Part shown: positions 4,934 through 60,232 of the stretch, piece by piece
Position numbering within the stretch: position 1 is the stretch's first letter
Layout: every line of letters starts with the position of its first letter
Assembly (NCBI RefSeq): GCF_964204865.1
Contig: NC_135261.1
Coordinates: 12,028,001-12,092,000 of the forward strand
Direction of reading: 5' to 3'
Source: Styela clava
Taxonomy: Eukaryota
DNA: 64,000 nt
Notes under the pieces: generated by a model
What the model was told of the DNA's origin: nothing
Database searches by the model: none
Seen by the model: the letters and a program-made list of their open reading frames with translations, nothing else
Made by a program: the position numbers and the translations under genes

Positions 4934-7900
4934 TGTCTCAAGGTGACGACTTCTTCGTAAGATGTATTTCAACAGGTGCAATTATTAAGCAATCATTATG
5001 TATTGAATCATGGTACTTTACGTTATTTTTTGTTTGGTAATGCGTTTAAAGATTTGTATATTTTTATATAAAAATACTGTCCAGAAGGTCTTCGAATTTC
5101 ATTCCTATACTTTAATTTTCGATATTCTTATTGCCATGTTTTATTTTAAATAAGGCATTGTTTGTTTCTTTTCTACAATTATTTATGTGATTTCTTTATT
5201 TTTAAAAAATGATTTGCTTGACAAAATAAAATATTGCATTTCATCTGTTCCTTACATTCTACACATTCCAATCTCCTATTTTCAACATTATCCACAGCTT
5301 GTTCCAACTAGTGCGATCATTGGTGCAAAAAAAATCAATCATATTTTTTCTTTTCCTGAATATTGTTTATTTTCTTATTTTTCTTTTTATCTCACTCTAA
5401 TGGTATTTTTTTTTAATTTTATTTCAGTGTTTATCGATGAAGTGTAGTAATAACCTTAATCGTGCAATGCACAGCATTTTGTAAAGTTAATAAATACTAA
5501 AATAAAAATGTATTTGTGAAGCTCTCGGTTCAAACGCGAACACCTGTAGTTAAAACAACAGATATCAATCTAACAATTTGAATAAAAATTATCAGTTAAT
5601 ATAGCTTGAAGAAAAATATAGTTTGTAAAATAATAACAACGTAGAACAATTGATATCACATAAAGACCATTTCTAAATAACCAGTTAAGCTGGTACGGCC
5701 CGGGTATCGATGGCAGAGATGAAAATATATAATTTATTTGACAATATTTATTGTTTGTCAACCATGGATTCGATATGAAATTACAATGACAATATTAGGC
5801 GTGATGTTTGTCATGACATGCAGATACGAGTTTTCTCAGGCACAGAAATTCAGGAACTACGAAACTAGATATTGTCACAACTTTCCAAAACAACAACATC
5901 ATGAAAAACAAGTATTTACAACGAAAAAGCTGAAAAGAAGTCATTGCGATAAAGAGTTCAACATTCCAAAAAGTTTGTTTCTCCTGCATTATTGTAATTA
6001 ATGAGGATATTAAAATCAAATCTACTCAGTCGTGCCTAAGGGACCATTAGTTACTAAGCTGTTTAGAAATATGGAGATAATGAGGTCATACTTGTGATCG
6101 GCATCAACACAATTTGGCACATTGGCATCTCAGCGAATAGTGTACAATAAAACTGCTCGTCATTAATCGTGACATATCAATAAGTAAAAATTTAATTATT
6201 CCACGACTTAAGGATTAATATAAGTAATAAGAGAGAGAAAATAAGTGTCAAGAATGTTTCGAAACTGTGGTTTTGTCCGAAACTATGAGTTTGCATATAC
6301 TAAAATTAACATAAGTTACCAATAGAAATGCTGAACGATCAGTGACGATTTGATATTTCTTCAACATAAATGAAAATTGTTTGTATGTTGATCTAATCTG
6401 TTCTCGTATGAAGGTGGTGGGGAATATCGGCGATGGTACCGTGTAACGGCGTGTGTTTTTTTTGTGTGCTGTTCGCGTTTCCATCCGGAAATTCTGGTTA
6501 TTTCTTTCCCAATAGATACTGGATAATCGTGTTATTTGTTTCAATCTTGATATTCTGTGTTTATTGTGAATATCAGCACGACGCGCGCGACGTCGTGGTA
6601 AGTTGTTATGATTGTGACGTAAAAATTCGACAACGACCCGTGGCCATCACACATCTCATGTTTATCTGATTGTGCTAAACTTGTAAACAGATACAGAATG
6701 TCCGCCATATTGATTGGGCCTATTTTGTCATTTGGCAGTTGCATTTTTGGTCAGTATTAACTTATAACAGGGTCGGACGAACTGCGACGCGCGAAGAATT
6801 TATAAGCGTCTCGCGAAAGCCTCTAACAAATAATAAAACAAATATAGAAATATAATTCGATAAGTATCGGATGCAATACTGTTAGATTCATACAGCTTTA
6901 CCACAGTGACTAACGGTAGTTTCCAATCAACCATAAGTGAAAAAGGTTTCTTATCTACAATCATTTGTAACACCTCTGACAATTTGGAGACGCAATAGAA
7001 TTCATTTTCTTTTGTCGTGCGGGATCTAGTTTTTCCGACTTCTCGATTATACTGTTTGGAGGTAGTTAAAACCCCGCACTGAAAAAATTCAGATATACTG
7101 TATTCAATTTCACTCTTTTGATATAACGTTTGTTCTGCTCCATAGTTTTATATTAGTTGATACGACATTCACGGTTCAATAGCTTTTAAAATTTTATATT
7201 ACGTTGCGTAACATTCAAAATAAAGAAAGGCACATGGAAGATATGCCATATTGACTTTAGTTGGAAAACCACAGATCAGGGGTTTGGAGATAGTTAGAAG
7301 AGGATTCACAAAATTTAAGAATAAGTAAACCCATGCACACATTTAAAATAAAACGCAAATGTGCTGATAAATGTCGCGTGGCCCGCAAGCCAACCAATGT
7401 GGCCCGCAAGTCAAATCAGCAGTCCATTTTTGACGTAGACAGATGCATTTATTCAACCCATAGTCCTACTTGAATAAGAACATATAAAAATACTGTTAAT
7501 GGCAAAACGGAAATATATCATCTCGATAAAAGCAATTTTTCTCAAATCCATAAATCAATATTTATTTTAAAGATTTTTTTAATTTGAAAATTACAATATA
7601 TTTCTAATTTAGATATAACAACTTTCATTAATCATAGCGCTAAAATCCTGAAAAATCACCTATGCGTGAGGACACTAACACCATTAGTATGGTGTATTAT
7701 ATTATATGCAATTACATATATATATTATCATTAGATCACTGTTTCCATGGAAAAAATAAAATAGCGTGTTCAGTATATATTCTGGAGTAAATTAGTCCCT
7801 CAGGAGTGAAAAAGAAGATAATATCATACCTCAAATCCTCGAAAATGTAATTATTGAATAAAAGTAATTGAAAGCTAATAGACACCATTCAGTTAATTTG

Positions 7901-16463: not shown

Positions 16464-16675
16464 ATGACGTTGATTCATACTTTCGACAATTATACTAGAA
16501 ATTACAATTAAATTTTAACGTATGTTAGCATTTTAATTCATTGCCATAGTATAAATTATTTAATCGTAGAAAAGTTGGCAGTAGTTTAAATTTGTGGAAT
16601 AAAAATTCAATTTCATGGGCACATACATGTTTATGCAATTCAAGAGTCCTGCTGCACACTAACTCAAATATATTT

Positions 16676-16717
16676 CTGTAACGTTTCGTCTGACCAAAAT
16701 CATACTTCCTCAGACAG
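16676..16717 (-). ncRNA. Minimal type I hammerhead ribozyme motif within a ~90-bp repeat (16634-16726)
   Basis: Minus strand reads CTGT-CTGAGGA-A-GTATGA-TTTTGG-TCAGAC-GAAAC-GTT-ACAG. Stem I is CUGU/ACAG, the CUGANGA and GAAA core boxes are present, stem II has one mismatch, and stem III is the palindromic AACGUU. Confidence 0.72.
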
Positions 16718-17416
16718 GCAGTTTATATTCTTTAAGCTGATATTCTTAAAAGTATATATTTATATGTGAAGAGCCTTGAAGAAATGATAAAAATTGCCCC
16801 AAGCACAATATAACCAAAATTGAATTTATTCACTTTGGAATCAATGCTACACCCATTTTCAATGTACTTTTTGGGAAAATATCAGTCCGAACAAACAGAT
16901 TTGATTACTTTTCTTGTGATACTTCTGATGCTCATTACAGCTGACAGAGATTTTACATCGGGTTGGCTCACAGATTTCATTACTAAAGTGTTCCATTACA
17001 TTTTATGGCTTTTCGTCGTATCGAAATATTGATCAACTCGCGTTGTCGTACATTCTTTCAGACCGTCCACATGTTCGGCTGTTTCAGTTCCACGTAGAAA
17101 GTAGAGGTATCCTCGCCTGCCCGTGTTCAAATTCAAGCCAACGCAAGCCAATAATTTTGCGAAAAGTAAGTGCCGTCTGACAAGAAACAACTTGTATCAT
17201 TGTTAGTTTTATAACATTGAGATAATGAATAATTGTATTGTACAATTAAATAATTGCTGAACGCCATTCGTATTGGGCCAGATCCGCTTCATAATGTGCC
17301 TTTCGAACAGGGATACACATTCTGTGGAACGCAGAAAATCATCCCGCAGCGTAGACGGAGTTATAGAGAGATGCAGTCAGGCAAAACCGCTAGAAAGAAG
17401 TCTGAAGAACTGAGGT

Positions 17417-45400: not shown

Positions 45401-48400
45401 ACTTTATTATTAATAAAAAATTTTTGAAGCGGTACATTGTGGAGAAGTAAATTTTACATTTAAAGATGAAAATGTGGCTTATTCTATTCAATATTTGAAT
45501 GCAATATTCTGATAAAATGTAGCTAGCAGTTAGGATTATGCAAGACTATCCTATCCCTCATTTTTGACTTTTTACTGGTGGATCCATATGTGTGTAATGC
45601 AAGGATGCTGTAGCGAGAACAAAATTTGATGTAAAATGTATATAATTAAATAATGTGATGAGTTTCGATTTGCACAAACTTTTCGGTTTAAATTAAGGCG
45701 CAAATTACGGTACATTTTACACTTTTTTGTTCTAAGAATTATTCACACCAACAAAATATCAATTCAATCGTGCAGGTGACTTATAGACCAGAAGGAATTG
45801 ATTTTAAAGGAGAAGCAATAACATTCAAAGCAACAACAGCAGGAATTATTGCAACTTTATCTCATTGTATCGATTTAATGTCGAGTAGAGAAGAAACGTG
45901 GCAGAGGAGATTGGAGAAGGTGTGTGAGGAGATTTGAAGAATTTTTTTTATTACTTTTTTTTACTTGAGAAGAAGAATACTAACGTCTAACAACAACATA
46001 ATAACTAAATCATCCATAGATCAACTTCATGAGTAAGGCGTGAGCATCAAAAGGATGCTCTTATTGTTGCTCCACTCCACTCTTGTTGTTGTTTTTCTCC
46101 ATAGCTAATGCACCAATCAATTTCAAATTTTCGATGAAAATGGAAGAAGTTGGCTAGAAGTCTAGTACTTTTATTTTTTTTTCTATGAGACCTGATATTT
46201 TACTTGAAATTTTGTATTTTCTTTTTGTTTATGGGAGCACTTTCTATAGCAAATTGGGAACACTCAGGGATATCCAAAACCGAATATTTTACTATTCCGA
46301 ATACATTCGTAAAAATAAAAAATTTGAATATGAAATATCGAATACATTCTAAATTGAGGACAATTTCATGTGTGAAATTACATAAGTCACTACATCTTCA
46401 TGTTCATTATGTCTGAAATGATATAAATTTAAAGGTCATTGTTTTCTCTATGTTGCTTGTTATCAGTTGAGATATCGTACGTTTTGTTATCTGCTTGTTT
46501 GGCAGCCCAAAAACTTTTTTAAATTATTCCTATATTTGAATATTTTTTTATGCTATATATACTATTTTTATATTATCATGCTTTACTGACAAATTTTACA
46601 GGATTGCAAAAAAATTTACAAAAAAACTATATTTTGATTACCGGTATCTGAATTTAGGGTTGGATATTACCGTAATTCAAATTTTTCCTAAATTCAATGT
46701 TTATTTTGACTTGTCTCACAGGAGCACGAGAAAAGAAGACGTTTAGAGGAACAACTTCGGCATGCCGTAGAGTCTGCAAAACAGAAAATTACTTTTGCTG
46801 GAAGCCCTGATTTTGAAGAAGGACCACAAAGTACGATTACGGAAGAAGAATTTTTTGATGCAGTGGAGGCGGAGCTGGATAAACAAGATAAAATAGTAGA
46901 AGATGTGAGTTGCATAGCAAGGCCCATAATCATGAAATATAGAAATCATAGTCTTAGGACAGTATTAAGAGAAATTGTCATAAACCAGTGGGGTATCACC
47001 ATGAAACCATGGAATGGTAGGAAACAATGAAATATTGTTAAATCACAGCTTGTTTTAATGTGATACATTGTTTTATTGCAACGTGATACTAAATTTTCTT
47101 GATTAATGTGATTCGCAAACCCTTCTCCATTTAATTTTTAGATCATCTATATTTCTCTGATTTTAAATAAGTTTCAATCCTTTTCGTAAAAGGCCATGCT
47201 TAACTATTTTTCGTGTAGAAGCTCCAGTGACCAAGTTAGATACTCGGAGGATCAAATGAATTTAATTTATACGGTTCCATTACATTTGAACCCACGTGCA
47301 TTTGAACCCATGACAATTGCACCTGTATGCTATTGCACCTATGGAATTTTTTTTGTTTCACGGATAGTTAAACCCATACTAACCCTAACCCATGGGTTTT
47401 AGCACCCGCATATAGATTGAACCCGTGGTTATACGCATGGGTTCAAATGTACATGGGTTCAAATGTACGGTCACCAATTTATACAAGTGTATCCACAAAA
47501 TTATTAATTTACTGTGTTAATTTTACTTCTTGAGTGAAATTATTATTCATGTCAAATATTACAGTGAACACAGCCCGTCGACAACCGATAATTTCTGATT
47601 TAGATAAAGTGGGATATACTAATAACATTTAACTTGGTTTTATTAATTATGTTTAAATATACTTTAGAGGGAACATTCGAAGAAGTTACAAAAAGCTGCA
47701 ATCGAAAAAGAAAAAACAGTGCACCCTTTCAGTAGAGAATTAGAACGAAGAATACATGAACATTTAATCGATTCGGTGAAAGATCCAAGTAAAGATGAAC
47801 ATACCGACTGGGAATTGTTTGCTGAAGAAGGAGAAATGAAAGTATATAGGTGGGTTTTGAATACATGAATATGAGGAAAATATAAATCTGATTTATAAAT
47901 GAAATTGGTAATGTCTGACATCTTTGACAATTGATATGCAATTTTATTGTGTGTGTAGTCACTACGCCGCAGTAAAACCGAAGTGTCACATTTTTCAGAA
48001 ATAAATTTTTTGATATTACCGGTATGTCATTATGAACCAAGGGCAATTTTTGGTCTAGGTTTCAAAGCTGTAGCTGTTTTAGTTTTGATTTGTCTGTTTT
48101 GAATTGGCTGTAAAATGTGATTTTCTCAAAACGTGACATAAGCGAATTTGGTTCTTTTGTAGCGATTAGGGCGAATTGGCCTGTTTTTACCAAATTAACT
48201 ATCTGACAAATAAGTTTTTCATTCTTGTCAATATGGTCCAATTCTTCAAAATATCTGTCAGTATCTCTTAATTGGCATATATTGTTATTTTTTTACGCGA
48301 TTTCGCTCAAAGGCCGCACTCATCCGCTCAGAAGTAATGGAAACTCATCTCTGGGCAAAGTTACGGCAGATACATAAATTCTAAAAGCTACTGAAAGTCT

Positions 48401-51102
48401 GAAACTATTCATTTATGAATGATTGACATGAAACTCCGAAAAATACCTTGCTAAAACATAAAAAAATTCATCGCCCTGAGGTTACACAGACAGTAAACAT
48501 ATGAAAGCTTGTGACCAACTGATAACGATAGCTGAAAATTTAAATTTTTTGGTATTCACTCATAGCTTTGAAGACACTTATTTAGGCCAACTGATTCACT
48601 TGACTTGATACTTGATACATTTTTTGCATTAAACATTTATTTTAATGAATTTTAATGATTTTCATTATTTTTCTTTAGACGTGAACTCGAGGAAGATGGA
48701 TTGATATGTGATCCATTGAAAGCCATGCATGCAATAGAAGGTGTTACTGCTCACGAAATGTGTCATTATTTCTGGGATACTGACGTTAGAATGGAATGGG
48801 AAGGTACATTCTTTTTTCATTAAAAATTAATTATAATACCAAATTCGACAATTTGGCCTTCTGGGTCAGTACCTAACTAGTTGTTAATCCAAGCCCATCC
48901 CATCTGATAAATTAATTTGTGAAGCGATGATAAAAAATGTTTGTTTTTTGTTACCATAGCAACAATTGAAAGTTTCCGTGTATTGGATGCTCCTGATGAT
49001 CACACATCTATCATTTATCAAACACATAAAAGAGTTTGGCCTGCGTCACAACGAGATTGTCTTTATTTATCATCGTTAAAGAAGGTTGGTATTAATTATG
49101 GATGGTTGGTATACACTGGGCTTGGATACTGTTTGTATAAAGGCTTTGATTGCTTGATATTGATAATGTTCTAAATTTTATTATTAGAACTACCTCCTAA
49201 TTTCAAATTTTTGATGTAGAATTGAAATTGAATTAGAAGTAGAGATGTTGTGAGACCCTAGGGACCATTTGAATTATTGGGCTTCCATCTAGACAGCGGT
49301 TTTGATTACATCTGTATATACTGAATAAAATGTTTGGAATTTTTACTTACACTCACAAAATTCTTTGTTTGGTGATCAATTTCTTCTCCATGCCGAGTCT
49401 TTTATAATCATAAGTCATGGTAACTTGATGCATAGTAATACTCTATACTCTACATAATATTATTCTTGGATATGAAACAAGCTTAACTTTATTTAAAAAA
49501 GGAATCTAATCAAATAATTAATTTTTTATTTTGAATCAGGTCGACGATATGATTCCGGAAGGTATGGTACAAAATCCAAAACCACACGATACGTACATTG
49601 TTTGTAATTTCTCTGTTGATCACCCTGATAACAATGTAAGTAGTTTTAGATTTATTTACCTGCAAATTAAAACTATCTTTTTATTACTATCAGTAGAGGT
49701 TGCGCGAGACTAACTCACAATCCTTTCTCAATGCCTTCGCGCTAGTGGATTCATACGCGTATAATGCAAGGATGCTGATTTGTAAACTGCTTGTCTGAAG
49801 AAGTCTGATTTTGGTCAGACGAAACGTTACAGAAATACATTTGTGTTAGCAGGACTCTTGTATTGCAAAGTATCCCAATATTATTGTACTGTTGAACTAT
49901 TTTCAGTGGCTCAAAATGCTTTTTCTACTATTTTTCAACATTGTTAAACTTTTCTTATTTTGATATTGTCAATTAATAATCAATGTTATCATATTAATTG
50001 TAGCCTGTCGCGGGATGTTTACGAGCAATCATCAGTATAGCATTAATATGTGAAACCTATGTTACACCGCCACCTAATGGAGGACCAATTGATAGAAACT
50101 GCCTCAAATGCAAAATTGTTTATGTCGCTAACAGTAAGTTATTTTCAAGTATTGTGCTTTGCTTCAGAATTAGCTTGTCCATCAGTCTCCAGTATTGCTT
50201 CTAACAACCACAGGCTAAAACAGACCCTTTGTAGCTATATATTGTTATTGGACATGGAGTGGATCTATAGATCGTTTTGGCATTATGTTGTTGTTGATTT
50301 TGTTAAAATTATTTTTCTTGTTCTTATTGTTATGAAATGTTGTTATTCGCTCATCTCTTTAATTGCTTTGAAATTTTCAGTAGCTATAGATTGTTTTTTG
50401 ATGCTAGAAGATCATTAGATTTATTTTTTTTCAAGATTTCTGTGGGTTCTATGGGATTTTTTTTTGTGTCCGAGGACGTCATCAAAAATATAAATTGTGC
50501 ACCTTGTGGCGGTTGGCGTACGCTGCTATCTAAGTTTACTATTTTAACAGTAAATTCATGACTTTACTCTGTTAAATTCATCACTATATCACGAATTAGA
50601 TACAAAATATACCAACATGAAATTTAGAAATTGAGGAGTGGTTGTCGACCAGAAAATTTTTAGATCAAAATTGAGATCTATATTCAAAGTTGTAGTTGGA
50701 AAAATTTTTGACTCCATATACAAGTCAGACTTTGTACTGGCGGAACGATATAGAATCAAATTAGTGGGAGAATGATATAAAAATATCTCAACCACTAAAT
50801 TATTGTTGCAGTCAGTGCATACTGGCTGCAAGAAAAGAGCAGTAATCAACCTAATATGCTAAAAAAATTTTGATACGTCTTGTTCTCTTTTTGATACAAT
50901 GTCCGTATTTGATTGAATATAATACAGATTTGTCTTAGATCGTACCTTACAAAGTCATATTTTTTTTATTTCAGTTAATCCCGGAGGTTGGGCACCAGCT
51001 GCAGTTTTGAGAGCTGTATATAAACGTGAATATCCCAAGTTTTTGAGGAGGTTTACCGCTTATGTCAAGGACAAAACAAAGAACAGAGAGATCTTGTTTT
51101 AA
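33429..51102 (+). CDS. CERT1: Ceramide transfer protein (COL4A3BP): PH, serine-rich motif, FFAT and START domains; 14 exons, 598 aa (+8 with the microexon)
   Basis: Exons 33429-33559, 34245-34347, 36555-36671, 42711-42816, 44259-44396, 45034-45122, 45776-45919, 46722-46904, 47668-47849, 48679-48803, 48960-49084, 49540-49635, 50004-50133 and 50975-51102 are all in phase. Motifs: [62 protein letters not shown] (FFAT), [18 protein letters not shown]. Confidence 0.96.
37314..37645 (+). mobile_element. tRNA-derived SINE, old CpG-decayed full-length copy in a CERT1 intron
   Basis: Colinear with the 28915 copy from the head (gtgtggc..gctaagc) to the tail (aatatgtaaatcc). Confidence 0.85.
38041..38064 (+). 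other. CERT1: Candidate 24-nt in-frame microexon of CERT1 (DNGYLMWR)
   Basis: CTAAT branch-like motif, acceptor ttttcttcag, 24 nt with no stop, then a consensus donor gtaagt. Phase 0/0 matches flanking exons 3 and 4. Confidence 0.6.
47273..47475. mobile_element. Mutator-like (MULE) MITE in CERT1 intron 8
   Basis: Inverted ends GGTTCCATTACATTTGAACCCA / TGGGTTCAAATGTACGGTCACC with a repeated ATTTGAACCCA motif; perfect 9-bp TSD AATTTATAC (47264-47272, 47476-47484). Confidence 0.85.
49791..49832 (+). ncRNA. Minimal type I hammerhead ribozyme motif, sense strand of CERT1 intron 12, within a ~90-bp repeat (49783-49867)
   Basis: TTGT-CTGAAGA-A-GTCTGA-TTTTGG-TCAGAC-GAAAC-GTT-ACAG. Both core boxes are intact, stem II is a perfect 6 bp, stem I is UUGU/ACAG, and stem III is the palindromic AACGUU. 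Confidence 0.75.
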
Positions 51103-51819
51103 TTTTACTTTAAACAACGTCAATAACAGTATTTAAAAACTAAAAATAATGTATTGGTCACAGAAACACCATCAAGTTGCATCAAGAGCCAGAAATTTTA
51201 GAATTCATATACTTTAATAGAAAACGATCAAACGTGTATGTGATATTCCATATGATATTGAAAAAAACAATGTTGTACAAACTTATTTCCATTTTTCTCT
51301 ACGTGAATTAAATTGTATATGATATGCAACATTGCACCCATTGATGATGTATAATACTGGATAATTTTTTATTTGAACATTCTGGAAAAGTACTTGAATA
51401 TGGAATATATTTTAAATGCAATTCGACCTTCGATAATGAACGCTCCAAAATTTTTGTATTTTATTACCAGAATTGTTTTTAATTTCAAGAAGTAAGCTTC
51501 TTTTTCAAACATGAAGATAATATAAATAATATAAAAAATGATCTCAAAACATGTATACAATATCCAAATGTTAAATCCTAAATGTTGCGTTGTATTTTGT
51601 CATTCTAACATGCATATCTTAATTCAATTTAATCAACTCTCAATAATTTACTAGCGTAGCAATTAAGTTGAAACATTTAATATAACATGGGACCTTTGAA
51701 AGCAACCGAAATTTGGCACTCGCTTATAAATTACTGTAATATTTGCATTTTTTTAATTGTAAACATACAATTGGCAATTGCAGTGTACATACACATGGCT
51801 TTAGTTGAAAAATATGTAT

Positions 51820-51872
51820 GTCAGAGTAGACACGTTACAGAAATATATTTGTGTTAGTGTGCAGCAAGACTA
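51820..51872 (+). repeat. Decayed copy of the hammerhead-bearing repeat (core lost) downstream of CERT1
   Basis: acgttacagaaatatatttgtgttagtgtgcagcaagact matches the 3' half of the 16.7 kb and 49.8 kb copies. Confidence 0.75.
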
Positions 51873-58020: not shown

Positions 58021-59544
58021 TTATTTGTTGTGCCTTTTTTCATGTTCTTTCAAGTTCTGTCTAAGTACGAAGGCTTTTCCACAGAAAGAGCATTGAAACG
58101 GTCGTTTTCCTTCGTGAAATTTCATATGTCGAGTAAATGACTGCCGATAAGTGAAACTCTTCCCACATGTTGTACAAAGGAATGGTTTTTCTCCACGATG
58201 TCGTCGTTCATGATCTTTCCAAGTTTTTTGATCAGCAAAAGAATTGCCACAGAATGTGCACATGTAAGGTTTTTCTCCAGTGTGAACACGATTGTGGGCT
58301 TTCAGACTTGATTTTTCTTTAAATTCCCTCCCACATATGGAGCAAAGATGCAATGGCTTGACAATGCCATGAAGTTTGGCCTGATGTTGACTCAATTCTT
58401 TTTTCTTCATGAATGAGGTAGCACACAAGTTGCAGTTATAAACTTTCTTTCCCTTATATTTTTTCCCATTGTTTTTCTTCGGAGGTGTAGTTTCTGAAGC
58501 TTCTGGATGTGTTAAAATATGAGTGCGTAATTGTTCAGCGGTCTCAAATTGTTCAGCACAATATTTACAGAAAAGGGTTTCAGGATGACGACTGTTATAG
58601 TGCCTGACAAGATGCCCTTTTGAATTGTACATAATTCCGCAAACAGCACAGACAAATGTTCGCTTTTGTTTTCCTCGTTTGCCTCTCTGTGGAACTGGAG
58701 ATATACTCACATATTGCGAGTCATCAACGTAATCATCAATATCTTCTTCATCATCATCATTTGCTACATCAGCTAACAATGAAGCTACTGCTCCAGCCCT
58801 CGCTGCAGCTGCCCGCTCTGGACGTCGTCGAGTTTTGTTATCTTTGTGCTCTGACATATGTGTAATCAGATCGGCTTCTGTATCGCATATTTCACTGCAA
58901 ATTACACAGTATAAAATACCATGTGTTTTTGCATAATCCACTGTTTGTGTAACATGTTCTTTTACTGTCTCAACTGGTAATTTTTCAATATTAGCATCAA
59001 CATCTTCAGATGGTTCATCAATTTGCTCAGACATGATTTGATCAGCATTTTGTTCTTCAGATTCTGAGGTGGTAATTGGATCCCCAATTTTTTCTTGATT
59101 ATTTGTAAAAGTTTCCAACAAACTGTCATTTAAATTACTGGATTCCAGCATTTCCAAATTTGACATAGGCGGCCTATTGGAAGTTTGTGCTGGTTGAAAC
59201 TCCGTGGGAATGTCCTCCATTTTGTACAATTTTGCCGCATGCAAAACTTGGCTGCGTTTTTCTTCATCATTGTAGACTTCGTCAGGAAATTTATCAGTAT
59301 AAATGAAGCACAACAAGGACGATAAGGCATACGCAGTCACACCATGCAATTGAATCGAAAGCTTTGATAAATTTGGGTCTTCTGCTGCTGATGATTGTAG
59401 AATCGCCTCCAAAACCCAAGAAGCTGCCGCAACAACGCAGCTGTGTGCCTTGAAGTAGGAACTCTCTACCTGAATGTGCAAATCGCAGTACTTGCCACTG
59501 AGAAACTGTTTATACAGCTTGCTACGAATGTTCAACTTGTCCAT
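58021..59544 (-). CDS. ZBTB-type transcription factor: BTB domain plus 8 C2H2 zinc fingers, single coding exon, 507 aa
   Basis: BTB motifs YCDLHIQVESSYFKAHSCVVAAAS and LLCFIYTD; eight CxxC-x12-HxxxH/HxxxxH fingers with TGEKPY, RGEKPF and EGKRPF linkers. First true ATG at 59544. Confidence 0.93.
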   Translation of the reverse strand: MDKLNIRSKLYKQFLSGKYCDLHIQVESSYFKAHSCVVAAASWVLEAILQSSAAEDPNLSKLSIQLHGVTAYALSSLLCFIYTDKFPDEVYNDEEKRSQVLHAAKLYKMEDIPTEFQPAQTSNRPPMSNLEMLESSNLNDSLLETFTNNQEKIGDPITTSESEEQNADQIMSEQIDEPSEDVDANIEKLPVETVKEHVTQTVDYAKTHGILYCVICSEICDTEADLITHMSEHKDNKTRRRPERAAAARAGAVASLLADVANDDDEEDIDDYVDDSQYVSISPVPQRGKRGKQKRTFVCAVCGIMYNSKGHLVRHYNSRHPETLFCKYCAEQFETAEQLRTHILTHPEASETTPPKKNNGKKYKGKKVYNCNLCATSFMKKKELSQHQAKLHGIVKPLHLCSICGREFKEKSSLKAHNRVHTGEKPYMCTFCGNSFADQKTWKDHERRHRGEKPFLCTTCGKSFTYRQSFTRHMKFHEGKRPFQCSFCGKAFVLRQNLKEHEKRHNK

Positions 59545-60232
59545 TTTATACAAAGTTGTAGGGGAAACCCGATAACAACGCAGAGTTCCCTTCAAAAGAT
59601 CAAGAATGCGAACAACGGCCGCGTTTCACATACAATGGGTGGTCCCAGAATGCAATGGCCAATCTGCTTTGAGCATCGGGCACATGTTTATCTATGACAT
59701 GCGGAAAAAGTGTTTCAAATTTTTCGATATTTTTTTTACGTTTAGTGAGCATATTTTAAAATGTGTAGCAACTAGCAACCATTCTCAAAAAATCTCGGAT
59801 TAAGTTTTCGAAGTATATATAAAGTTGTGAAAGTAAGATTTCTGCATTTTTTAAATTAGCAGTAGAATTAAAAAGAGAGATATTCTGGGATTGGTCTACA
59901 AAAGTAGAGTTTAGGATGCATTCTTCAAATCTTCAGAGTGCCGTCGTAAGGTAACGAAGCATTGACAAGGCAGAGCCATAATGGCTCTGGACAAGGTATG
60001 GGAAAATAGAATTTGAATAATATGGTATACTTTCGTATCGTTTTACTTTTGGTAACCTTTTTTTAGTTTCAATTGAAATATTGATTAAATTTATGTTACA
60101 ATTGTTTTTTGAAAACCGAAAACAGGTAGCCTAAAGCCAAAAATTATACTCAACGCCAGTTGTTAGCGTGTTTTAATGACTATATGGAAATTAAACTGCA
60201 CCATGCACATTCTGCTGTTAAAGTAAGATAGA

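What the first reader, a model, noticed from the sequence alone, without database searches (positions are those of the whole stretch)
49783..49867. Dispersed ~90-bp repeat carrying a minimal hammerhead ribozyme, with a core-intact copy on the sense strand of CERT1 intron 12
Seen: CTGAAGA-A-[GTCTGA-TTTTGG-TCAGAC]-GAAAC-GTT flanked by TTGT/ACAG. This gives both conserved hammerhead core boxes, a perfect stem II, a short stem I and a self-complementary AACGTT in place of stem III. The same unit recurs at 16634-16726 (-) and in decayed form at 51820-51872. Established: such minimal type I hammerheads are typical of Penelope-like retroelement termini and retrozyme-like repeats, and are thought to cleave as dimers through the palindromic stem III. 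Inference: this is a small, abundant ribozyme-bearing mobile family (3 or more copies in 64 kb) with no adjacent RT ORF. This copy is transcribed within CERT1 pre-mRNA, where cleavage after GUU (49828) could affect splicing or transcript level.
Basis: partly seen in the sequence, partly recalled or inferred. Interest (0 to 1): 0.85.

Follow-up and report, generated by a model that had tools for sequence, protein, structure and literature searches.

The report
Penelope retroelement fragment with minimal hammerhead
The motif is real: it is the usual minimal hammerhead ribozyme in the tail end of a Penelope-like retrotransposon, here an old, truncated, non-coding fragment inside a CERT1-like intron, so it is an ordinary example of a known kind of element.

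Summary
Window 49795-49830 (+) holds CUGAAGA, an unpaired A, a 7-bp helix II, GAAA and the palindrome ACGU, with the cleavage site at 49828|49829. A second core-intact copy lies at 16678-16713 (-).

It is not a free-standing 90-bp repeat. It is the 102-bp 3' end ("A") of a Penelope-like element (PLE) family. The window insertion (about 49686-49875) has two head-to-head truncated arms: an inverted fragment of the 113-bp optional tail ("B") and A.

The same genome holds:
- a 587-bp non-coding deletion derivative (A-B-X) in tandem arrays;
- autonomous 3.7-kb PLEs with 938-973-aa ORFs (reverse transcriptase plus C-terminal GIY-YIG endonuclease, CX2-5CxxC linker) carrying the same hammerhead;
- about 958 core-intact motifs, against 1 for the reversed-pattern control.

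Young insertions have 8-13-bp target-site duplications. Propagating lineages keep the core and helices through wobble or compensatory changes; dead copies decay evenly.

The copy is on the sense strand of a 368-bp intron of a CERT1-like gene.

The scan had already noted this family elsewhere in this genome. It is a new member of a known kind, of low interest.

The parts
49686..49777 (-). Left arm of the insertion: an inverted fragment of the family's optional 113-bp tail (B, positions about 114 to 22), 5'-truncated inside the tail
   Evidence: blastn of B (L005:1599-1712) against the window gives 49685-49777, minus strand, 89% identity. The left edge was read.
49780..49875 (+). Right arm: the hammerhead-bearing 3' end of the element (A, from position 5). 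It has a 5-nt deletion relative to the family and an uncertain right edge (49872-49883).
   Evidence: blastn of A gives 49780-49849 at 97% identity; alignments; sequence.
49791..49794 (+). Helix I, 5' strand (UUGU)
   Evidence: Pairs with 49829-49832 (ACAG): A-U, C-G, A-U, G.U (pair counts).
49795..49802 (+). Core box CUGAAGA (C3-A9, N7 = A) plus the unpaired A between positions 9 and 10.1
   Evidence: The unpaired nucleotide is a hallmark of PLE minimal hammerheads (PMC4209133).
49803..49820 (+). Helix II hairpin: GUCUGAU / loop UUUG / GUCAGAC, with a G10.1-C11.1 closing pair
   Evidence: formed in the minimum-free-energy fold; covariation.
49821..49828 (+). Core GAAA, the palindromic A15.1-C15.2-G16.2-U16.1, and U17; predicted scissile bond 49828|49829
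   Evidence: There is no hairpin helix III; the ACGU palindrome would pair between two molecules.
49829..49832 (+). Helix I, 3' strand (ACAG)
49540..49635 (+). Upstream host exon (START-domain part of the CERT1-like gene). The GT donor is at 49636, 50 nt before the insertion.
   Evidence: Reading frame; splice site. The resemblance to CERT is from my own knowledge of the protein.
50004..50133 (+). Downstream host exon, with the AG acceptor at 50002-50003. The intron (49636-50003) is 368 bp, about half of it the insertion.
16632..16725 (-). Second copy of A (positions 8-101). The core is intact and helix II has one C>A mismatch. It lies outside the CERT1-like gene.
51796..51871 (+). Third copy: the 3' end of the autonomous 'family 2' PLE type, with the hammerhead destroyed by an internal deletion. 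It lies about 0.7 kb downstream of the CERT1-like stop codon.
   Evidence: Alignment A2.
45575..45624 (-). Fragment of the tail B (positions 8-57, 86% identity) in an upstream intron of the same gene

Best explanation
Window 49686-49875 is an old, non-coding, doubly 5'-truncated insertion of a Penelope-like retroelement (PLE) family.

The family's RNA ends in a 102-nt segment (A) that holds a minimal type-I hammerhead, followed by an optional 113-nt tail (B). Insertion by the element's reverse transcriptase/GIY-YIG endonuclease typically leaves two head-to-head arms, each ending in A, with the tail on one side only, flanked by a target-site duplication (TSD). Here the left arm is cut down to 93 nt of inverted tail, and the right arm is A alone.

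The copy derives from an older subfamily of a 587-bp deletion derivative (A-B-X). That derivative is mobilised in trans by autonomous 3.7-kb PLEs of the Neptune/Nematis type present in the same genome.

Shown: the sequence motif, the family anatomy, the TSDs, the autonomous partners, and the lineage-level conservation of the ribozyme.

Inferred:
- In the element's life cycle the hammerhead acts in multimeric or tandem transcripts, where two motifs pair through the ACGU palindrome to form helix III.
- In the CERT1-like pre-mRNA the single sense copy is essentially inert, because it has no partner in cis and is removed with the intron.
For: Motif and chance: (2 matches against 0 in shuffles).

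Genome abundance:
- 2074 first-look BLAST candidates.
- 352 flank-anchored matches against 0 for the control.
- 958 core-intact motifs against 1 for the control.

Anatomy: A, B and X pieces and the 587-bp tandem period in L021-L023. Every composite insertion examined has two inverted arms ending in A, with B at one end only.

TSDs of 8-13 bp flank the whole composite in 10 young insertions.

Autonomous partners:
- L061 ORF 6483-9296 (938 aa) matches RVT_1 (E = 1.4e-9) and GIY-YIG (E = 4e-5).
- The L062 ORF (973 aa) matches GIY-YIG.
- CNRKACTTC and CGRQSCSTC linker motifs lie upstream of GIY-YIG.
- Protein-atlas neighbours are animal RT/GIY-YIG/HTH_animal clusters, score 0.99.
- A (91-94% identity), B (86-90%) and the start of X flank these ORFs as pseudo-LTRs, with a 3694-bp period.

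Ribozyme constraint between lineages: 96.5% of cells paired against 25-43% for slid controls; 4 pairs with changes on both sides; a hypervariable loop II; an invariant core.

Literature:
- Every structural hallmark matches the PLE minimal hammerhead description (PMC4209133).
- The insertion architecture matches the PLE description (PMC8557442).
- Two RT start sites explain the tail (PMC11167929).
Against:
- No cleavage assay was possible, and the dimer fold cannot be evaluated with nested-structure software.
- The window copy has no clear TSD, and its right edge is uncertain by about 10 nt.
- The tail is 113 bp, against the 30-40 bp reported for other PLEs.
- Most compensatory changes come from one distinct PLE family (L117), aligned through equal motif length rather than sequence homology.
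- The middle of X (about positions 112-305) has no detectable counterpart in the autonomous elements.
- Clade placement rests on a motif, not a tree.
Confidence: 0.88

Rival explanations
1. The sense-strand hammerhead is active within the CERT1-like pre-mRNA, for example by pairing in trans with abundant family transcripts. It would cut the intron 193 nt downstream of the 5' splice site and lower or modulate CERT1 expression.
For: The core, helix II and cleavage triplet are intact. The copy is on the sense strand of a short 368-bp intron. About 958 intact motifs in the genome could supply trans partners if they are transcribed.
Against: - There is only one sense motif in the transcription unit. 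The 16.7-kb copy is antisense and outside the gene, and the 51.8-kb copy lacks the ribozyme.
- Published single PLE minimal hammerheads show no detectable self-cleavage, and dimers cleave poorly (PMC4209133, PMC6765202).
- In a green anole PLE no RNA-seq reads began or ended at the hammerhead site (PMC11167929).
- Dead copies genome-wide decay evenly, so nothing suggests host-level selection.
- The gene's splice sites and frames around the insertion are intact.
Confidence: 0.04
2. The short elements are retrozymes in the strict sense. They would propagate through self-cleaved, ligated circular RNAs and be only loosely related to PLEs, rather than being simple internal-deletion derivatives copied by the PLE machinery from linear or multimeric RNA.
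For: Head-to-tail arrays with a 587-bp period, each unit holding a hammerhead. A 360-bp array of a related derivative lies at C3:14331845-14332628. Animal non-LTR retrozymes are tandem hammerhead repeats thought to be mobilised by PLEs (PMC7229834; preprint 10.64898/2026.07.22.740005).
Against: - The hammerhead is the minimal PLE type, not the canonical loop-loop type of retrozymes.
- The unit is longer than the 150-450 bp reported.
- A, B and both ends of X are directly homologous to the autonomous PLE.
- Copies contain both sides of the cleavage site and show PLE-type 5' truncation, inverted arms, a one-sided tail and TSDs. None of these needs a circular template.
- Circular RNA could not be tested.
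Confidence: 0.07
3. A chance occurrence of hammerhead-like boxes in AT-rich intronic DNA.
For: Rfam's hammerhead models give no hit even at E <= 10.
Against: 0 matches in 100 shuffles against 2 observed in the window. Genome-wide, 958 matches against 1 for the reversed pattern. The motif sits in a defined repeat family linked to RT/GIY-YIG ORFs. The Rfam models require a hairpin helix III, which this class lacks by design.
Confidence: 0.01

Closest known systems
Minimal type-I hammerheads (min-HHR) of metazoan Penelope-like elements (Cervera & de la Pena 2014, PMC4209133; Lunse, Weinberg & Breaker 2016, cited in PMC6765202)
   Same: [quoted passage not shown] Located in the pseudo-LTRs of RT/GIY-YIG elements. 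Mostly found as single dispersed motifs from truncated copies, or as opposite-strand pairs 100-700 bp apart. Hundreds to thousands per genome.
   Different: Nothing essential. This is a specific family in an unnamed invertebrate-type genome. Young copies are nearly identical, indicating a recent burst, whereas most published genomes show high heterogeneity (Drosophila virilis is the published exception).
EN+ Penelope-like elements of the Neptune/Nematis type (Arkhipova 2006; Craig et al. 2021, PMC8557442)
   Same: [quoted passage not shown]
   Different: The tail is about 113 bp, against the 30-40 bp usually reported. Clade assignment here rests on the linker motif only, with no phylogeny.
Animal non-LTR retrozymes (Cervera & de la Pena 2020, PMC7229834; Li, Clavereau & Pollet 2026 preprint, 10.64898/2026.07.22.740005)
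   Same: Non-coding tandem units, each with a type-I hammerhead, co-resident with PLEs and proposed (for vertebrates, argued) to be non-autonomous PLE derivatives.
   Different: Retrozymes carry canonical hammerheads with loop-loop contacts, have units of 150-450 bp, and are known as abundant circular RNAs. Here the motif is the minimal PLE type, the unit is 587 bp, and no RNA data exist. The homology to the autonomous PLE is direct at both ends.
Poseidon PLE of the green anole (PAc): two internal RT start sites (Frangieh et al. 2024, PMC11167929)
   Same: Genomic copies end at either of two positions. The stretch between them is the optional tail. The hammerhead lies in the pseudo-LTR close to the ORF start.
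   Different: The PAc tail is about 30-40 nt, and its ORF begins inside the hammerhead. Here the ATG lies about 150 nt downstream of A, beyond B.
Conserved intronic hammerheads of amniotes (mentioned in PMC7229834 as having a role in mRNA biogenesis)
   Same: A hammerhead on the sense strand of an intron of a protein-coding gene.
   Different: Those are canonical, monomer-active motifs conserved at orthologous positions. This one is a transposon-derived minimal motif with no sign of host-level conservation.

Membership tests
PLE minimal type-I hammerhead (min-HHR) | Conserved catalytic boxes CUGANGA ... GAAA, with a U16.1-H17 cleavage site | tested here: met
   49795-49801 CUGAAGA; 49821-49824 GAAA; G-U-U at 49826-49828.
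PLE minimal type-I hammerhead (min-HHR) | [quoted passage not shown] | tested here: met
   A at 49802. GUCUGAU/GUCAGAC gives 7 pairs including one U.G, closed by G-C. The pairs are kept across lineages.
PLE minimal type-I hammerhead (min-HHR) | A short, open helix I (type-I topology, 4-5 bp) | tested here: met
   UUGU with ACAG, 4 pairs. One compensatory G-C to A-U change in a distinct PLE family.
PLE minimal type-I hammerhead (min-HHR) | No hairpin helix III; palindromic 15.1-16.1 / 15.2-16.2 allowing a dimer | tested here: met
   ACGU at 49824-49827. It is AGCU in the distinct family L117, so the palindrome is kept through a double change.
PLE minimal type-I hammerhead (min-HHR) | Resides in the pseudo-LTR of elements encoding RT plus GIY-YIG | tested here: met
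   Met for the family: A-B flank the 938- and 973-aa RT/GIY-YIG ORFs in L061 and L062 and in many other loci. This copy itself is a truncated fragment without an ORF.
PLE minimal type-I hammerhead (min-HHR) | Self-cleavage, as a dimer | not testable with these tools
   Needs in vitro transcription. Cofolding software cannot represent the intermolecular helix III inside helix I.
Rfam hammerhead families (Hammerhead_1, _3, _II, HH9, HH10) | A score at or above the gathering threshold of a curated covariance model | tested here: not met
   No hammerhead hit at gathering thresholds on the whole window, nor at E <= 10 on 49600-50000 or on the young copy L005:1470-1620. This is expected, because these models include a hairpin helix III.
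EN+ Penelope-like element (Neptune/Nematis type): the family's autonomous members | A single ORF with RT followed by a C-terminal GIY-YIG endonuclease | tested here: met
   L061:6483-9296 has RVT_1 at residues 420-595 and GIY-YIG at 843-927. L062:2559-5477 has GIY-YIG at 879-960. The two ORFs are 61% identical.
EN+ Penelope-like element (Neptune/Nematis type): the family's autonomous members | [quoted passage not shown] | tested here: met
   CNRKACTTC at residue 805 and CGRQSCSTC at residue 840. The criterion is from PMC8557442.
EN+ Penelope-like element (Neptune/Nematis type): the family's autonomous members | Insertion signature: 5' truncation, partial tandems (pseudo-LTRs), an adjacent inverted 5'-truncated copy, a tail at one end, and a TSD | tested here: met
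   architecture; TSDs of 8-13 bp.
EN+ Penelope-like element (Neptune/Nematis type): the family's autonomous members | Phylogenetic placement of the RT within a named PLE clade | not tested
   No reference PLE RT set was available as tool-derived sequence. Only feature-based neighbours were found.
Animal non-LTR retrozyme | Tandem units of 150-450 bp carrying canonical type-I hammerheads with loop 1 - loop 2 contacts | tested here: not met
   The unit is 587 bp. The motif is the minimal type, with an open, 4-bp helix I and no loop 1.
Animal non-LTR retrozyme | [quoted passage not shown] | not testable with these tools

The most novel reading that the evidence does not exclude
The single sense-strand minimal hammerhead, 193 nt into a 368-nt CERT1-like intron, is cut in vivo by pairing in trans with transcripts from the roughly 1000 intact family copies. 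Transposon activity would then tune the output of a ceramide-transfer gene, and of other host genes with sense intronic copies.
Probability: 0.03. Interest if true: 0.55.

Novelty: new member of a known kind. Interest (0 to 1): 0.15.

Why it matters
The finding adds a well-resolved example of a known phenomenon and opens no new question. Within one genome it shows three things side by side: autonomous Neptune/Nematis-type PLEs, a young 587-bp deletion derivative, and thousands of truncated ends, all sharing one minimal hammerhead.

Two points may interest specialists in mobile elements. First, the optional tail is unusually long (about 113 bp), which implies RT start sites about 110 nt apart. 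Second, the direct homology between tandem non-coding units and an autonomous PLE in an invertebrate supports the view that retrozyme-like arrays are PLE derivatives.

For the host gene, the likeliest consequence is none.

Tried and rejected
1. Rfam scans gave no hammerhead hit. I rejected this as evidence against the motif, because the models need a hairpin helix III.

   - The later genome pattern search used a degenerate family motif, not window letters.

3. Monomer and dimer folding:
   - The 96-nt fold is no more stable than shuffles (z = -0.9).
   - The cofold minimum-free-energy structure is a trivial extended helix II duplex.
   - The true dimer is pseudoknot-like and cannot be scored, so the result is uninformative.

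4. Preferential conservation of the core among 49 diverged genomic copies was not seen. Substitutions per site per copy were 0.057 for the core, 0.048 for helix II, 0.051 for loop II and 0.051 for the flank; only 16 of 49 copies keep both boxes. I read this as neutral decay after insertion, not as evidence against the ribozyme, because the constraint shows up between propagating lineages. The sample was chosen for having at least one interior change, so only comparisons within the interior are fair.

5. An apparent subfamily with a dead core (CAGAAGA, 6 copies) looked like evidence that the ribozyme is dispensable. These copies sit inside a larger repeat of at least 2 kb with 97-98% identity, so they were duplicated passively.

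6. A Pfam START search of the genome did not pick up the window's short exons. A linker-region exon gave no PDB hit. Gene identity rests on the PH-exon hit and on my reading of the frames.

7. No clear TSD was found for the window copy.
Full report
**Observation.** On the + strand, 49791-49832 reads UUGU, CUGAAGA, an unpaired A, GUCUGAU-UUUG-GUCAGAC, GAAA, C-G, U-U, then ACAG. Both hammerhead core boxes are intact. Helix II has seven pairs, closed by G10.1-C11.1. Helix I has four pairs. ACGU is palindromic where helix III would be. The scissile bond would be 49828|49829. A pattern joining the core to the downstream flank occurs twice in the window (49795-49830 +, 16678-16713 -) and never in 100 dinucleotide-preserving shuffles. 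Rfam finds no hammerhead at gathering thresholds, nor at E <= 10 on this copy or on a young family copy. This is expected, since those models require a hairpin helix III.

**What the repeat is.** A BLAST of the unit against the window's own genome (377 Mb, 380 contigs) gave 2074 first-look candidates. Most of the 47 scored matches were identical to each other. Comparing 30 loci resolved three pieces:
- A, 102 bp, which holds the hammerhead;
- B, 113 bp, which follows A in only some copies;
- X, 372 bp, which is non-coding.

A-B-X repeats head to tail with a 587-bp period on C8 and C1. Dispersed copies start at variable points (5' truncation) and end either at the end of A or at the end of B. 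Most young insertions consist of two head-to-head arms, each ending outward in A, with B at one end only. Ten of them are flanked as a whole by 8-13-bp target-site duplications in AT-rich DNA. This matches the published insertion signature of Penelope-like elements: 5' truncation, partial tandems, an adjacent inverted truncated copy, and a 'tail' at one end (PMC8557442). The tail is explained by two internal reverse-transcription start sites (PMC11167929).

The window insertion fits the same scheme in miniature. 49686-49777 is an inverted tail fragment (B positions about 114 to 22, 89% identity). 49780-49875 is A from position 5 (97% over the first 70 nt, with a 5-nt deletion). It shares N7 = A and other diagnostic bases with older copies such as L002 and L014. 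No TSD is recognisable any longer.

**Autonomous partners.** A genome search with the GIY-YIG profile gave 88 matches, several in open frames of 940-977 aa. In 21 of the 30 fetched GIY-YIG loci, blastn found segments similar to A (89-96% identity), B (81-90%) or the ends of X; where the endonuclease and A could be placed together (L060, L061), A lies about 0.65-0.9 kb downstream of the endonuclease. In L061 the layout is A, B, the 5' part of X (which contains the ATG), a 938-aa ORF, a 3' UTR, the 3' part of X, then A again, with a 3694-bp period and an inverted truncated copy upstream. The ORF matches RVT_1 and GIY-YIG. It carries a CX2-5CxxC motif in the RT-EN linker, the mark of the Neptune and Nematis clades (PMC8557442). 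Its feature-based neighbours are animal RT/GIY-YIG clusters. A second lineage (L062, 973 aa) is 61% identical. The 587-bp element is therefore an internal-deletion, non-autonomous derivative of these PLEs. The middle of X has no detectable counterpart in them.

**Is the ribozyme under constraint?** A flank-anchored pattern that does not specify the ribozyme found 352 copies, against 0 for the reversed control. A pattern for an intact core, the G10.1/C11.1 pair and the ACGU palindrome found 958, against 1. Among 49 diverged copies, private substitutions are spread evenly: core 0.057, helix II 0.048, loop II 0.051 and flank 0.051 per site per copy. Only 16 keep both boxes. Inserted copies therefore decay neutrally, as dead transposon ends should.

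Between lineages that have propagated, the picture differs. The core is invariant and loop II is hypervariable. Helix II changes are wobble-compatible or compensatory. A distinct PLE family (L117, with 227-bp direct repeats around degenerate ORF pieces) keeps helices I and II and the palindrome through changes on both sides. Overall, 96.5% of cells are paired, against 25-43% when partners are slid, and four pairs have double changes. One caveat applies: most double changes come from that single family.

An apparent dead-core subfamily (CAGAAGA) proved to be copies carried inside a larger repeat of at least 2 kb, so it says nothing about whether the ribozyme is required.

**Host context and likely function.** The + strand between 33.4 and 51.1 kb carries exon-like frames of a CERT1-like gene. 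The PH-domain exon matches PDB chains of collagen type IV alpha-3-binding protein (CERT) at E = 2e-15. The insertion lies in the 368-bp intron between exons 49540-49635 and 50004-50133, starting 50 nt after the donor site, with A in the sense orientation. The intron number was not verified.

The transcription unit contains no second sense hammerhead. The 16.7-kb copy is antisense and outside the gene. The 51.8-kb copy belongs to the L062-type autonomous lineage and has lost helix II through a deletion. The 45.6-kb fragment is tail only.

Published single PLE minimal hammerheads show no detectable self-cleavage, and dimers cleave weakly (PMC4209133, PMC6765202). In the green anole PLE, no RNA-seq reads began or ended at the site (PMC11167929). 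I therefore infer that this copy is spliced out with the intron and has no effect on CERT1.

**Comparison and verdict.** Every defining sequence feature of the metazoan PLE minimal hammerhead is met, and the family's autonomous members meet the PLE criteria that could be tested. The element resembles animal non-LTR retrozymes in forming non-coding tandem arrays. It differs from them in carrying the minimal rather than the canonical hammerhead and in having a longer unit. A 2026 preprint argues that vertebrate retrozymes are PLE derivatives (10.64898/2026.07.22.740005), and this genome shows the same relation directly.

Earlier notes of this scan had already flagged the same family on other pieces of this genome. 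One follow-up there reached the same conclusion, and I reached mine independently before reading it.

Noticed in passing
L005:1599-1712 (B), and every composite insertion in L006-L030: The optional one-sided 'tail' of this PLE family is about 113 bp, three times the 30-40 bp reported for other PLEs. This implies two reverse-transcription start sites about 110 nt apart.
   Followed up: partly
G000:C1:1618645-1618680, 3927775-3927810, 4466078-4466113, 5096781-5097273 and others: A second, unrelated-looking minimal hammerhead family: CUGAUGA-A-GUUUUUC...GAAAUUC-GAAAC-GUC. Its helix II has two U.U mismatches and it has a GUC site. It recurs many times, sometimes as opposite-strand pairs a few hundred bp apart.
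   Followed up: no
L117:1562-1788 and 5710-5936 (G000:C9:22064500-22070500): A distinct, degenerate PLE with 227-bp direct repeats. Its hammerhead has a GUUAGA/UCUAAC helix II, an AGCU palindrome and a GCUC|A site. It supplies the compensatory changes used.
   Followed up: partly
L105-L109 (G000:C4:2.41-2.99 Mb) and L104 (C3:1.94 Mb): A repeat of at least 2 kb (97-98% identity, five copies within 600 kb of C4) that carries a PLE A-B fragment with a dead hammerhead core (CAGAAGA). The nature of the larger repeat is unknown.
   Followed up: partly
G000:C14:12466738 / 12487809 / 12508850, with GIY-YIG matches at 12473966 / 12495024 / 12516060 / 12557746: A tandem segmental duplication with a period of about 21 kb. 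Each unit holds the same composite PLE insertion and a GIY-YIG fragment.
   Followed up: no
G000:C3:14331845-14332628: Three hammerheads of the autonomous 'family 1' type spaced exactly 360 bp apart: a second, shorter deletion derivative in tandem.
   Followed up: no
window 45575-51871: Three PLE fragments from different subfamilies lie within 6.3 kb of the 3' half of the CERT1-like gene. The genome average is roughly one per 180 kb. This may reflect the reported tendency of PLEs to insert near earlier copies.
   Followed up: no
window 58024-59625 (-): An uninterrupted 534-aa open frame on the minus strand downstream of the CERT1-like gene. It was not examined.
   Followed up: no
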